Assembly: GCF_006345805.1 (NCBI RefSeq)
Contig: NC_043000.1
Span: 148,614,001 to 148,678,000 of the forward strand
Reading direction: 5' to 3'
Length of the DNA stretch: 64,000 nucleotides
Origin: Octopus sinensis
Taxonomy: Eukaryota
Shown piece after piece: positions 8,447 to 11,598 of this stretch. The notes beneath the pieces are model-generated. The model was given only the letters and a program-made list of their open reading frames with translations, was not told the origin of the DNA and made no database searches. Both the position numbers and the translations under genes were made by a program. Within the stretch, counting starts at the first letter, position 1; every line of letters starts with the position of its first letter.

Positions 8447-8659
8447 CTGCTGTGAGTTGATGAGTCTCGTTAAAGCAGTGCACCTGTACGGAATGCCGGC
8501 AAACTCCAAGGTTGATATCAAACAGAAGACCGGTTGGACAGGTACGTTGATAAGGTATGCCGTAGTTGCAAACATAGAACATATCACAGTTGTCCGGATG
8601 CTGAAACATTCCAAACATTTCCGGACACACGAACTGACTTAGGGAAGACCTGATCAGAA
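8447..8659 (-). CDS. Coding exon: end of signal peptide plus a complete chitin-binding peritrophin-A (CBM14/ChtBD2) domain
   Basis: Acceptor ttcgtttgtag| at 8660 and donor GCAG|gtaagc at 8446; 213 nt, phase 1-1. Translation (V)LIRSSLSQFVCPEMFGMFQHPDNCDMFYVCNYGIPYQRTCPTGLLFDINLGVCRHSVQVHCFNETHQLTA has six Cys spaced 12-5-9-12-7 with the conserved aromatics (F-Y-x-C, L-L-F-D). Confidence 0.92.
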
Positions 8660-8749
8660 CTACAAACGAATAAATAAATAATTAGATTAAGTAATGAATA
8701 AATCTTTTCTTGGAACGGCGGCTCTCAAAGCAACAGATAAAGCTATAAA

Positions 8750-9047
8750 TTTTGGCACAAGGCCAGCAATTTCTGGGGTGGGATTAGTCGATTGCATCGA
8801 CCCCAGTGCTCAATTGGTACATATTTTATCTATTTCTTTACTACCCACAAGGGGCTAAACACAGAGAGGACAAACAAGGACAGACACGCGGATTAAGTCG
8901 ATTATATCGACCCCAGTGCGTAACTGGTACATATTTTATCGACTCCAAAAGGATTAAAGGCAAAGTCGACCACGAAGGAATTTAAACTCAGAACGTAAAG
9001 GCGGACAAAATGCGGCGAAGCATCTTGTCCGGTGTGCTAACGATAAA
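8750..9047 (-). mobile_element. Old SINE-A1 carrying an inserted A2 tail fragment
   Basis: tggtacatattttatc duplicated at 8815-8830 and 8925-8940 around an A2 tail. Confidence 0.8.
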
Positions 9048-9454
9048 ACTATAAATAACAGCGTGTAAAATATTTGGCTAAAACCTCTTTGGACAGAAGA
9101 AGTGGAAAGCTGTCCCTTGGTTCCACGGACGGCCTTCGACTTTTTCTATAGCTTTGTCTGCTGCTTCGAGAGCCACAGTTCCCAAAAAGCATCATTTCAC
9201 AATAATTTATATATTTTATGATATCAACAAAATAAATGAATAAACGACGATTTGTTACCCATTACGCAAGGCGAACAGTACAAGATCGTACAGTACAGTA
9301 CAACCAAGCGTCACTCGCGATCGGATATGGTTTGGTGACATGTACAACAAAACATTTTATCTGATGAGTTTACTCTTCTGCCAACCCATCATTTTTTTTT
9401 TAAACAACGATTTCTGATTTAGACTCAAAACCAGCATGTTTGAGGTATAGGGAA

Positions 9455-10920
9455 GTCGTCTATAAAATCTATTTCAGTACTTGACTGGTACTTTATTATA
9501 TCGACCCCAGCGGGATGAAAGCCAAAACTGACTTAGGCAGGATCTGAAATGAGAGAGCTGGAACAAATACCGCAAGCCTTTTTCCTTTTTCTTTTGTGAC
9601 GCTCTATCGCTTCTTCTAGCTCGTCGCCTTTTTGTATGTTCGTAATAACAGTTTCTAATCTAGACACAAGGCCGGCAATTTGGGGGGGAGGAGGAGGATA
9701 CGATACTATAGCTATATGTATTGTATGTTCATGCTATTTCTGAGCTGGTAGAATCGTTAACACGCCGGGCAAAATACTTAGCGGCATTTTATCCGTCTTT
9801 ATGTTCTGAGTTCAAATTTCGCCAAGGTCAGCTTTGCTTTTCATCCTTTCGTAGTCGATAAAAAAAAAGTGCCAGTTAAACACTAGGGTCGATGTAATCG
9901 ATTTGACCCCTTCTCCTGAAATTGCTGGTCTTGTGCCAAAATGTGAAATCAATATATCTAATTCTTTTGGCACAAGGCCAACAATTTTGATAGAAGGGGA
10001 AATCCATTACATCGACTCCTGTACTTAACTGGTTCTTATTTTATTGGCTCCGAAGGATAAAAAGCAGAGTCGACCTCGGTAGCATTTGAACTCAAAACGT
10101 AAAGCCGGAAGAAATGCTGCTAAGCATTTTGTTCGTTGTGTTAAGGATTATGTCACCCTACTATATGTTTGTAGCAATAGAAAGCGTTAACAATTGCAAA
10201 GACTTTGACTTGACATCAATGCATGTACAAGATGTTCAGCTGTTTTCTCAATAGGCTATTATTGCGCATGCGTTTACATTCATTGCCTAAATATCGGTGT
10301 CAAATTTTGGTAAAAAGGCAGAAATTTCAGGAGAGGGGCTAAATCGATTACATCGACCCCAGTAATCAACTGGTCCTTATTTTATCGACCCTAAAAGCAT
10401 ATGAGGCAAAGTCGGTCTCGGCAGAATCCTTTACGTAAAGATGGACGAAATACCTATTTCTTAACTACCCACAAGGGGCTAAACGCAGAGAGGACAAACA
10501 AGGACAGACAAACGGATTAAGTCGATTATATCGACCCCAGTGCGTAACTGGTACTTATTTAATCGACCTCGAAAGGATGAAAGGCAAAGTCGACCACGGC
10601 GGAATTTGAACTCAGAACGTAGCGGCAGACGAAATACCGCTAAGCTTTTTGCCCGGCGCGGTAACGATTCTGCCAGCTGACCGCTTAACACATTGCCTAA
10701 ATATTGGTTACAAGTTTTGGCACAAGGTCAGCAACGTCGGGGGATGGGTAAGTCGATTACATAGACACCCCAGTGATTAACTGGTATTTATTTTATCGAC
10801 CCCGAAAGGACGAAAAGTAAAGTCGACCTCAGTGGAATTTGAACTCAAAGCATAAAGATGGACGAAATGTTGCTAAACATTTTTGAAGGCGTGGTAACGA
10901 TTCTGCCTGCACACCGCCTT
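9455..10920. mobile_element. Intronic SINE-A cluster: ~9455-9630(-), 9742-9948(+), 9965-10150(-), 10300-10685(-, A1/A2 composite), 10705-10920(-)
   Basis: Each segment aligns by eye to the SINE-A consensus. Confidence 0.8.
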
Positions 10921-10949
10921 AGATTCATTGCCTAAATATCGAGAACTAT

Positions 10950-11177
10950 CTCTTTTACTCTTTTACTCTTTTACTTGTTTCAGTCATTTGACTGTGGCCA
11001 TGCTGGAGCACCGCCTTTAGTCGAGCAAATCGACCCCAGGACTTATTCTTTGTTAGCCTAGTACTTATTCTATCGGTCTCTTTTGCCGAACCGCTAAGTA
11101 ACGGGGACGTAAGCACACCAGCATCGATTGTCAAGCGATGTTAGGGGGACAAACACAGACACACAAATACATACACA

Positions 11178-11246
<69 letters not shown>

Positions 11247-11410
11247 GATGGGCTTCTTTCAGTTTCCGTCTACCAAATCCACTCACAAGGCTTTGGGCCG
11301 GCCCGAGGCTATAGTAGAAGATACTTGCCCAAGGTGCCAAGCAGTGGGACTGAACCCAGAACCATGTGGTTCGTAAGCAAGGCACTTACCGCACAGCCAC
11401 TCCTACGCCT
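10950..11410 (-). mobile_element. SINE-B, full length
   Basis: 5' aggcgtaggagtggctgtgcgg, internal (TA)n, [AAAAGAGT]n tail. Confidence 0.92.
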
Positions 11411-11519
11411 ATAAGAACCAAGATTTTCTTTCCTCAGTCATTCCTCTGTATTTCACAAACAAGACCATTTTTCAAAAAAGCTATTACTAAGAATCAGATA
11501 AAAATATAAATTAACTTAC

Positions 11520-11598
11520 CAGCAATGATGATCATACAACTTGTCATAATAGTGCTCTGTGATATTGGCGAGTGACAGATTTTGTGAAGAGATGTCAT
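11520..11598 (-). CDS. First coding exon of the chitin-binding protein gene (signal-peptide N-terminus)
   Basis: ATG at 11598 gives MTSLHKICHSPISQSTIMTSCMIIIA+G, then donor GCTG|gtaagt (phase 1). It joins the CBM14 exon in frame to give ...MIIIAVLIRSSLSQ-FVCP, a signal-peptide-like h/c region. An alternative in-frame ATG lies at 11547. Confidence 0.82.

What the first reader, a model, noticed from the sequence alone, without database searches (positions are those of the whole stretch)
8447..11598. Secreted chitin-binding (CBM14) protein gene that the ORF track misses as a spliced unit
Seen: two exons with canonical splice sites join in frame to give a signal-peptide-like N-terminus followed directly by one six-Cys peritrophin-A domain and an N-E-T sequon. 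The domain exon is symmetric (phase 1-1, 213 nt). Established: CBM14 proteins are structural or regulatory components of chitinous matrices, including cephalopod beak chitin-binding proteins, and phase 1-1 exons are typical shuffling modules. Inference: a lineage-specific matrix protein (beak, radula, sucker or gut lining). The next exon is unresolved and may lie left of the window.
Basis: partly seen in the sequence, partly recalled or inferred. Interest (0 to 1): 0.7.

Follow-up and report, generated by a model that had tools for sequence, protein, structure and literature searches.

The report
Annotated octopus chitin-binding protein gene
The two exons are real. They are the first 97 codons of an already catalogued but unstudied Octopus sinensis gene for a secreted protein with two chitin-binding domains and a long glutamine-rich helical tail, so the finding is correct but ordinary.

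Summary
Exon 1 (11598-11520, 79 nt) and exon 2 (8659-8447, 213 nt, phase 1-1) lie on the minus strand and join in frame through GT/AG sites. Together they encode a signal-like N-terminus, one six-Cys domain and an N-E-T sequon. The domain matches Pfam CBM_14 at E=2.7e-13 (50.3 bits; cutoff 22.1).

It is not a new gene. Window 1-21598 is 100% identical to Octopus sinensis chromosome CM016862.1. The 97 spliced residues equal the N-terminus of RefSeq XP_029635063.2 (UniProt A0A6P7SAF1, "Chitin-binding type-2 domain-containing protein", 559 aa).

It adds a second CBM14 domain and a ~400-aa Cys-free, basic, Gln/Glu/Lys-rich tail, mostly predicted as long helices.

O. bimaculoides has the same three-exon gene (XP_052822961.1). 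dN/dS is 0.28 overall and 0.12 for the two domains.

The most likely function is a secreted protein that binds and organises chitin, with the tail acting in self-association or spacing. Tissue and chitin binding are untested. No close relative was found outside Octopus. Interest is low.

The parts
11696..11705 (-). TATA-like box (TATATAAATA), 98-107 nt upstream of the first ATG. Candidate core promoter.
   Evidence: Read directly. The stretch is 100% conserved in O. bimaculoides within a flank with 4 differences in 184 nt. Promoter function is inferred, not tested.
11520..11598 (-). Coding exon 1 (79 nt, ends in phase 1). It encodes residues 1-26 plus the first base of codon 27, and includes the hydrophobic core of the signal peptide.
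   Evidence: Identical to residues 1-26 of XP_029635063.2. Donor is CTG|GTAAGT. An in-frame stop lies upstream at 11631-11629.
11545..11547 (-). Second in-frame ATG (Met18). Starting here would give a classical 18-residue signal peptide, MTSCMIIIAVLIRSSLSQ.
   Evidence: All 3 sinensis/bimaculoides differences in exon 1 lie upstream of this ATG. Which ATG is used is not resolved.
8660..11519 (-). Intron 1 (2860 nt; 2122 nt in O. bimaculoides), rich in copies of a 150-220 nt interspersed repeat.
8447..8659 (-). Coding exon 2 (213 nt, phase 1-1). It encodes residues 27-97: the end of the signal peptide, the first CBM14 domain and the N-E-T sequon.
   Evidence: It differs from the O. bimaculoides exon at 2 of 213 nt, with identical splice sites.
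8475..8627 (-). First CBM14 (peritrophin-A / ChtBD2) domain, from Cys38 to Cys88.
   Evidence: Pfam PF01607 at E=2.7e-13. It is the only six-Cys CBM14-pattern match in all six frames outside microsatellite artefacts. PDB sequence relatives are the CBM14 domains of chitinases and chitotriosidase, and Der p 23.
8463..8471 (-). N-glycosylation sequon N90-E-T92, two residues after the sixth Cys.
   Evidence: Conserved in O. bimaculoides. Occupancy is untested.
1..8446 (-). First 8446 nt of intron 2, which is 24,548 nt in total. The third and last coding exon (1388 nt) lies about 16.1 kb beyond the left edge of the window.
   Evidence: This stretch includes an O. sinensis-specific ~974-bp tandem duplication at 6258-8251.

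Best explanation
The interval holds the promoter-proximal part of a three-exon, minus-strand gene of Octopus sinensis: coding exons 1 and 2, which give 97 of 559 codons. The gene is already in RefSeq (XP_029635063.2) and UniProt (A0A6P7SAF1).

**Shown**
- The exon structure and the identity to the public model.
- The two CBM14 domains.
- The single N-terminal hydrophobic segment.
- Purifying selection against the O. bimaculoides orthologue.

**Inferred mechanism**
- The N-terminal hydrophobic segment directs the protein into the secretory pathway and is cleaved near Ser34/Gln35.
- The two disulfide-knotted CBM14 domains dock on chitin through their conserved aromatic residues. These include the Trp of domain 2 that aligns with the terminal Trp of the human chitotriosidase chitin-binding domain.
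- The Cys-free, basic (pI 9.5), Gln/Glu/Lys/Arg-rich tail forms long helices containing LQKEQQQ heptad repeats. These self-associate or act as a spacer.
- The protein would therefore cross-link or organise chitin fibrils in an extracellular chitinous structure.

Which structure it is (beak, radula, sucker lining, gut cuticle, stylet) is not resolved.

Confidence is about 0.97 that this is that gene, about 0.8 that the product is secreted and binds chitin, and about 0.5 for the scaffold or cross-linker role of the tail.
For: - **Identity to the public genome:** window 1-21598 matches L002 (O. sinensis GCA_006345805.1, CM016862.1) with 0 mismatches and 0 gaps.
- **Identity to the public protein:** the spliced 97 aa equal residues 1-97 of P0151, which is XP_029635063.2 / A0A6P7SAF1.
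- **Exon map:** 79 + 213 + 1388 nt, with introns of 2860 and 24,548 nt, all GT-AG. The map reproduces the deposited protein exactly. O. bimaculoides has the same architecture.
- **Domains:** CBM_14 at E=2.7e-13 for exon 2 alone. Two CBM_14 stretches and no other domain appear in the full protein, 71.4 bits.
- **Solved relatives by sequence:** chitinase CBM14 6g9c at E=1.5e-8; chitotriosidase ChBD 6so0 and 5hbf; Der p 23 (4zce).
- **Selection:** dN/dS against O. bimaculoides is 0.28 overall, 0.12 for the two domains and 0.27 for the tail. All 12 domain Cys are conserved.
- **Hydropathy and composition:** only one hydrophobic segment, at the N-terminus, and no other transmembrane-like stretch. 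The tail has 0 Cys, pI 9.5 and 16.6% Gln.
- **Predicted helices:** AlphaFold2 gives helices 271-373 (block pLDDT 67-90) and 396-465 (up to 80). Heptad-like LQKEQQQ repeats are present.
Against: - No transcript, tissue or biochemical data were available, so splicing rests on computed gene models plus conservation.
- Within the window's 292 coding nt, all 5 differences from O. bimaculoides are non-synonymous. The in-window part alone therefore shows no constraint; the constraint appears only over the whole CDS.
- The CBM14 domains were modelled with low confidence, pLDDT <50, so the fold is supported by sequence only.
- The signal peptide was judged by hydropathy and the -3/-1 rule, not by a trained predictor. 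From the first ATG the n-region is unusually long (17-20 aa).
- Heptad a/d hydrophobicity of the tail is only moderate, 0.4-0.6. It could be a single charged helix or disordered rather than a coiled coil.
- CBM14-type domains can bind other ligands, for example the '25 kDa polyphenol-binding protein' 8in3.
Confidence: 0.7

Rival explanations
1. Soluble defence lectin or antimicrobial protein. The CBM14 domains would recognise chitin on fungi or parasites, in the manner of horseshoe-crab tachycitin. The basic tail would add membrane or polyanion binding. The protein would not be built into a matrix.
For: - The nearest non-Octopus domain relatives are chelicerate peritrophin-1-like or uncharacterised multi-CBM14 proteins from spiders and Limulus/Tachypleus.
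- The mature protein is basic, pI 8.9, with a tail pI of 9.5.
- The gene looks young or fast-evolving and restricted to Octopus in the databases searched. That is common for immune genes (my knowledge).
Against: - Overall dN/dS of 0.28, and 0.12 in the domains, shows no sign of an arms race.
- The 400-aa helical Gln-rich tail has no parallel in tachycitin-type peptides.
- No expression data place it in haemocytes.
Confidence: 0.15
2. Secreted protein whose CBM14-fold domains bind something other than chitin, such as another glycan, a polyphenol or a protein partner. It would then be a regulatory or adhesive factor rather than a chitin-matrix component.
For: - A solved protein built of CBM14-like repeats is named '25 kDa polyphenol-binding protein' (8in3) and matches at E~3e-6.
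- Domain 1 has His where domain 2 and chitotriosidase have the C-terminal Trp.
- There are many dibasic sites in the tail.
Against: - Both domains keep the aromatic-rich core motifs (FY.C, CP.GL.F) that align with bona fide chitinase chitin-binding domains.
- Chitin binding is the default function of PF01607 members.
Confidence: 0.1
3. Not a functional gene: a chance or decaying CBM14 exon stitched to a fortuitous ATG exon by gene-prediction software.
For: - All five differences from O. bimaculoides in exons 1-2 are non-synonymous.
- No literature or transcript evidence was found.
Against: - The reading frame, all three exons, all splice sites, both ATGs, all 12 Cys and the stop are intact in two species.
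- Whole-CDS dN/dS is 0.28 with dS = 0.16, based on 46 synonymous against 58 non-synonymous differences over 311 and 1288 sites.
- The tail differs between the species only by in-frame indels, 5 and 26 residues in total.
- The Pfam E-value is 2.7e-13.
Confidence: 0.03

Closest known systems
RefSeq XP_029635063.2 / UniProt A0A6P7SAF1 (Octopus sinensis 'putative uncharacterized protein DDB_G0274435' / 'Chitin-binding type-2 domain-containing protein') and its O. bimaculoides orthologue XP_052822961.1
   Same: It is the same gene. The window DNA is 100% identical to the locus, and the spliced 97 aa are identical to residues 1-97. The O. bimaculoides orthologue has the same three exons and is 90% identical in protein.
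   Different: Nothing differs for O. sinensis. The window simply lacks exon 3. The public name 'DDB_G0274435' is an artefact of the Gln-rich tail. No functional study was found.
Arthropod peritrophins and cuticular proteins analogous to peritrophins (CPAP1, CPAP3/obstructor)
   Same: They have a signal peptide followed by one or more six-Cys CBM14 domains, and are extracellular chitin organisers (my knowledge of the family). The best non-Octopus domain matches are spider 'peritrophin-1-like' proteins at 43-56% identity over 39-53 aa.
   Different: This protein has two domains, not one or three. It has no Ser/Thr/Pro mucin linkers. Instead it carries a 400-aa Gln/Glu/Lys-rich helical tail with no homologue among the top 150 hits. 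It is molluscan, not arthropod.
C-terminal CBM14 of family-18 chitinases and human chitotriosidase (PDB 6g9c, 5hbf, 6so0)
   Same: Direct sequence similarity at E=1.5e-8 to about 1e-4. The Cys framework, the FY.C and CP.GL.F motifs, and (for domain 2) the C-terminal Trp all align.
   Different: There is no catalytic GH18 domain; Pfam finds only CBM_14.
Molluscan shell-matrix Pif/BMSP proteins
   Same: They are molluscan secreted proteins that use peritrophin-A-type chitin-binding domains to tie a matrix to chitin (PMC11291548, abstract seen).
   Different: Pif/BMSP are defined by a VWA domain together with the chitin-binding domains. No VWA domain is present here.
Squid beak chitin-binding proteins (DgCBPs)
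   Same: They are cephalopod secreted chitin-binding structural proteins, proposed to form a chitin-protein scaffold.
   Different: The characterised DgCBP-3 domain carries the Rebers-Riddiford consensus, with only a C-terminal resemblance to peritrophin-A. Its named octopus relatives (A0A0L8H3P5, XP_029637511.1) are other proteins.

Membership tests
CBM14 / peritrophin-A / ChtBD2 (Pfam PF01607) | Match to the family HMM above the curated gathering score | tested here: met
   Exon 1+2 product scores 50.3 bits, E=2.7e-13, against a cutoff of 22.1. The full protein scores 71.4 bits with two stretches.
CBM14 / peritrophin-A / ChtBD2 (Pfam PF01607) | Six cysteines with the family spacing (ChtBD2 consensus CX11-24CX5CX9-14CX12-16CX6-8C, recalled from the literature) | tested here: met
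   Domain 1 spacing is 12/5/9/12/7. Domain 2 spacing is 12/5/9/10/7, read; its fourth spacing of 10 is slightly short of that consensus. All 12 Cys are conserved in O. bimaculoides.
CBM14 / peritrophin-A / ChtBD2 (Pfam PF01607) | Conserved aromatic residues of the chitin-binding face | tested here: met
   The motifs MFYVC / HFYLC and CPTGLLFD / CPFGLIFD align with chitinase and chitotriosidase CBM14 domains. Trp143 of domain 2 aligns with the terminal Trp of 5hbf/6so0. That this Trp matters for binding is from memory.
CBM14 / peritrophin-A / ChtBD2 (Pfam PF01607) | Secretory (extracellular) protein with an N-terminal signal peptide | tested here: met
   There is a single hydrophobic core at residues 18-29 (9-residue Kyte-Doolittle maximum 3.58), followed by the polar stretch RSSLSQ, and no other hydrophobic segment. 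This is a heuristic only; no trained signal-peptide predictor was available.
CBM14 / peritrophin-A / ChtBD2 (Pfam PF01607) | Three-disulfide beta-rich fold | tested here: inconclusive
   AlphaFold2 models of the domain have pLDDT <50: 46.6 for a single sequence, and <50 in the two-sequence model. Short strands are predicted but not reliable, so no fold search was run.
CBM14 / peritrophin-A / ChtBD2 (Pfam PF01607) | Binds chitin | not testable with these tools
   Needs a pull-down, ITC or NMR experiment with the recombinant domains.
Pif/BMSP shell-matrix proteins | VWA domain together with chitin-binding domains | tested here: not met
   A Pfam scan of the full 559-aa protein finds only CBM_14.
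Peritrophic-matrix mucin-type peritrophins | Pro/Thr/Ser-rich mucin linkers between or after the CBM14 domains | tested here: not met
   The tail is 16.6% Q, 10.5% E, 9.8% K, 9.3% S and 9.0% N, and is largely predicted helical.
Insect CPAP1 / CPAP3 (obstructor) families | Exactly one (CPAP1) or three (CPAP3) ChtBD2 domains with family-specific spacing, and arthropod orthology | tested here: not met
   There are two domains. The best arthropod matches are only 43-56% identical over single domains.
Squid beak DgCBP family | Sequence homology to DgCBP-1 to -4 and presence in beak | not tested
The literature names different octopus proteins as DgCBP-3 relatives.

The most novel reading that the evidence does not exclude
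The gene encodes an Octopus-restricted chitin-organising scaffold. Two CBM14 anchors would be fused to a Gln-rich heptad-repeat (LQKEQQQ) helical tail that self-assembles by coiled coil, polar zipper or condensate formation. The number of tail repeats already differs between two sister species. Such a protein would give a cephalopod-specific chitinous material, such as sucker lining, beak base, stylet or gut cuticle, its architecture by a mechanism not described for arthropod CBM14 proteins.
Probability: 0.2. Interest if true: 0.45.

Novelty: already known. Interest (0 to 1): 0.13.

Why it matters
As a scan result it matters little.

Biologically, the protein is an uncharacterised candidate for cephalopod chitin-material biology. 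It has two CBM14 domains and a long Gln-rich helical tail, and was found only in Octopus. It would become interesting only if expression or proteomics placed it in a specific chitinous structure.

Tried and rejected
1. **Other CBM14 exons in the window.** A six-frame Cys-pattern scan and tblastn of the domain and of the full O. bimaculoides protein found only 8475-8627. The other pattern hits are (TG)n microsatellite artefacts at 24.9-25.6 kb and 28.8-29.3 kb. Exon 3 is therefore outside the window.

2. **Word-index protein search.**
   - The 80-aa product found nothing.
   - The 239-aa N-terminus found nothing, not even the protein itself.
   - The full-length O. bimaculoides protein returned only the two Octopus proteins, because its Gln-rich tail saturated the 8000-candidate list.
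   - These searches therefore say little about other cephalopods.

3. **The spliced protein could not be submitted to the representative search**. The contiguous exon-2 translation was used instead.

4. **Short isoform by read-through of the exon-2 donor.** This would add ...AGKLVLLVLKEWK* and give a 110-aa single-domain protein. I rejected it as the main product because the read-through frame and its stop are not conserved in O. bimaculoides.

5. **AlphaFold2 of the domain alone** (pLDDT 46.6) and of the domains within the full model (<50) was too poor for a fold search. None was run.

6. **Literature.** There were no hits for DDB_G0274435, XP_029635063, A0A6P7SAF1 or XP_052822961. Searches on octopus plus peritrophin or chitin-binding gave nothing on this gene.

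7. **RNA families.** Rfam and ARAGORN find nothing anywhere in the window.

8. **Pfam on eight other long ORFs of the window** gave only weak C2H2 zinc-finger hits for 60102-60614.
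Full report

Yes. On the minus strand, 11598-11520 reads ATGACATCT...ATCATTGCTG and is followed by GTAAGT. The stretch 8659-8447 is preceded by a pyrimidine-rich tract ending TTTGTAG and followed by GTAAGC. The exon lengths are 79 and 213 nt, so exon 1 ends in phase 1 and exon 2 is symmetric, phase 1-1.

The join gives 97 residues: MTSLHKICHSPISQSTIMTSCMIIIAVLIRSSLSQFVCPEMFGMFQHPDNCDMFYVCNYGIPYQRTCPTGLLFDINLGVCRHSVQVHCFNETHQLTA.

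- Pfam CBM_14 (PF01607) matches residues 41-88 at E=2.7e-13, 50.3 bits against a gathering score of 22.1.
- The six Cys are spaced 12/5/9/12/7, and the N-E-T sequon follows two residues after Cys6.
- The open frame around exon 2 (8681-8409) has no ATG ahead of the domain, so an upstream start exon is required.
- A mechanical ORF list shows only two unconnected pieces, 8409-8630 (GTG start) and 11494-11598.
- The only hydrophobic stretch of the protein is residues ~18-29.

**2. What is it?**

An exhaustive HMMER search with the exon-2 translation against 1.84 billion representative proteins gave 3187 hits. All are CBM14 proteins. One stood out: P0041, whose residues 28-97 match the whole query.

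- P0041 is XP_052822961.1 of Octopus bimaculoides. It begins MTSLHKIC..., so it is the same exon 1 joined to the same exon 2.
- Searching with P0041 returned P0151, which is XP_029635063.2 of Octopus sinensis. It is also UniProt A0A6P7SAF1, "Chitin-binding type-2 domain-containing protein", 559 aa.
- The first 97 residues of P0151 are identical to my spliced product.
- The genomic locus of P0151 (L002; GCA_006345805.1, CM016862.1) is 100% identical to window 1-21598 over 21,598 nt, with no mismatch or gap.

The window is therefore O. sinensis CM016862.1:148,614,001-148,678,000, and the gene is already annotated in that assembly. No other gene is called within the 49-kb locus.

**3. Full anatomy**

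Rebuilding the CDS from the locus reproduces the deposited protein exactly with three coding exons:

| Feature | O. sinensis | O. bimaculoides |
|---|---|---|
| Exon 1 | 79 nt | 79 nt |
| Intron 1 | 2860 nt | 2122 nt |
| Exon 2 | 213 nt | 213 nt |
| Intron 2 | 24,548 nt | 19,115 nt |
| Exon 3 | 1388 nt | 1325 nt |

All introns are GT-AG. Exon 3 lies at L002 37701-39088, about 16.1 kb to the left of window position 1. Consistently, tblastn of the orthologue finds only exons 1 and 2 in the window.

Exon 3 encodes a second CBM14 domain fused, in the same exon, to a ~400-aa tail.

- Pfam sees two CBM_14 stretches and nothing else.
- The tail has no Cys, pI 9.5, GRAVY -1.76 and 16.6% Gln. It has seven further N-x-S/T sequons and many dibasic sites.
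- AlphaFold2, with only a two-sequence alignment (mean pLDDT 44.5), predicts helices 271-373 (block pLDDT 67-90) and 396-465 (up to 80). It leaves the CBM14 domains at low confidence.
- The second helix contains LQKEQQQ heptad repeats. O. sinensis has 17 more residues of them than O. bimaculoides.
- Heptad a/d hydrophobicity is only moderate, 0.4-0.6. Coiled coil, single charged helix and partly disordered are all possible.

**4. Is it a functional gene?**

The two species are collinear over the locus, with roughly 84-93% identity in alignable non-coding blocks.

- Within the window's 292 coding nt there are five differences, all non-synonymous: H9Q, S10L, I12V, H47Y and D52A. On its own this shows no constraint.
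- Over the whole CDS, Nei-Gojobori dN/dS is 0.28 (dS 0.165). It is 0.12 for the two CBM14 domains and 0.27 for the tail.
- All 12 domain Cys are conserved, both ATGs, the splice sites and the stop are conserved, and indels are in frame only.
- A TATATAAATA box lies 98-107 nt upstream of the first ATG and is fully conserved.
- The three exon-1 changes all lie before the second ATG (Met18). Starting there would give a textbook 18-residue signal peptide. Which ATG is used is open.

**5. How it most likely works**

Shown: the architecture is a signal-like N-terminus, two CBM14 domains and a helical polar tail, under purifying selection.

By sequence, both domains resemble the chitin-binding domains of a nematode chitinase (6g9c, E=1.5e-8) and human chitotriosidase (6so0, 5hbf), and the chitin-binding mite allergen Der p 23 (4zce). 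The FY.C and CP.GL.F motifs are retained. In domain 2, the Trp aligns with the terminal Trp of the chitotriosidase domain.

Inferred: the protein is secreted and binds chitin bivalently through the two domains. It uses the helical Gln-rich tail for self-association or spacing, so it organises or cross-links chitin fibrils in some chitinous extracellular structure. Tissue is unknown.

Rivals:
- A soluble chitin-recognising defence lectin. The nearest non-Octopus domains are chelicerate, and the protein is basic.
- A CBM14-fold protein with a non-chitin ligand, as in the polyphenol-binding protein 8in3.
- A non-functional model, which is very unlikely given.

**6. Comparison with the known**

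It is a member of the CBM14 family on every sequence criterion I could test. The fold and chitin binding itself could not be tested.

It is not:
- a Pif/BMSP protein, because it has no VWA domain;
- a mucin-type peritrophin, because it has no Pro/Thr/Ser linker;
- a CPAP1 or CPAP3 protein, because it has two domains and only 43-56% single-domain identity to arthropod proteins.

The one characterised domain (DgCBP-3 CBD-gamma) is described as carrying the Rebers-Riddiford consensus, with only a C-terminal resemblance to peritrophin-A. Its octopus relatives are different accessions.

Outside Octopus, no domain exceeded ~56% identity over ~40 aa, and nothing among the top 150 hits matched the tail. 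The architecture therefore looks restricted to Octopus in the data I could reach. The word-index searches were uninformative, and coverage of other cephalopods is unknown.

**7. Verdict**

The feature is already known as an automatically annotated, uncharacterised gene, and no paper mentions it. Interest is low. The only mildly novel angle is the combination of two CBM14 domains with a Gln-rich heptad-repeat tail, as a possible Octopus-specific chitin scaffold.

Noticed in passing
window 6258-8251 (intron 2 of the gene): A recent tandem duplication with a unit of about 973-974 bp and copies 99.3% identical, starting about 200 nt downstream of the exon-2 donor. O. bimaculoides has a single copy, since L001 12896-13437 matches both window copies.
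   Followed up: partly
window ~6780-7190 and ~7750-8160, + strand: Each duplicated unit carries a SINE-like element with a tRNA-like head (GTGGAGGCACATGGCCTAGTGGTTAGAGCAGCGGACTCGCGGTCGAGGGATCGCGGGTTCGAATC...). ARAGORN and Rfam at gathering threshold do not call it. The ORFs 6859-7287 and 7833-8426 in the ORF list are read-throughs of this repeat.
   Followed up: partly
window 8827-9060, 10014-10164, 10451-10684, 10767-10917 (intron 1); also 1-208, 9741-9959, 12388-12596, 18926-19137, 27984-28204, 37358-38613: A 150-220 nt interspersed repeat is present in many copies in both orientations, at 68-80% identity to copies in the O. bimaculoides locus. It accounts for much of intron 1.
   Followed up: no
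window 1493-1868, 14057-14438, 29731-30121, 43690-44053, 45837-46214, 46889-47205: A second repeat family of about 380 nt has copies 90-96% identical to each other and to copies in both Octopus loci. It looks like a young dispersed element.
   Followed up: no
window 26659-27093 (+): An ORF whose translation looks by eye like the C-terminal part of a mariner/Tc1 transposase (...DIAPSDFYLFRSL...). It has no Pfam hit at E<0.01.
   Followed up: partly
window 60102-60614 (-) and 61158-61667 (-); also 18368-18730 (+) and 52896-53264 (-): ORF fragments that look transposon-derived. The first has weak C2H2 zinc-finger Pfam hits (E ~1e-5, mostly below gathering score). The others have no Pfam hit, but resemble retrotransposon ORF2 tails by eye. 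The two ORFs 18368-18730 and 52896-53264 resemble each other.
   Followed up: partly
window 24900-25620, 28850-29250, 56226-56940, 462-1255: Long imperfect microsatellites of (TG/CA)n, (TATG/CATA)n, poly-purine/pyrimidine and (TA/TATC)n types. They generate spurious long Cys/Val-, His/Thr- or Tyr/Ile-rich ORFs and false six-Cys pattern hits.
   Followed up: yes
L002 / L001 exon 3 (outside the window): The LQKEQQQ heptad-repeat block in the tail is 17 residues longer in O. sinensis than in O. bimaculoides, and further in-frame indels occur in the Gln-rich runs. The tail length is evolving by repeat slippage while dN/dS stays at 0.27.
   Followed up: partly
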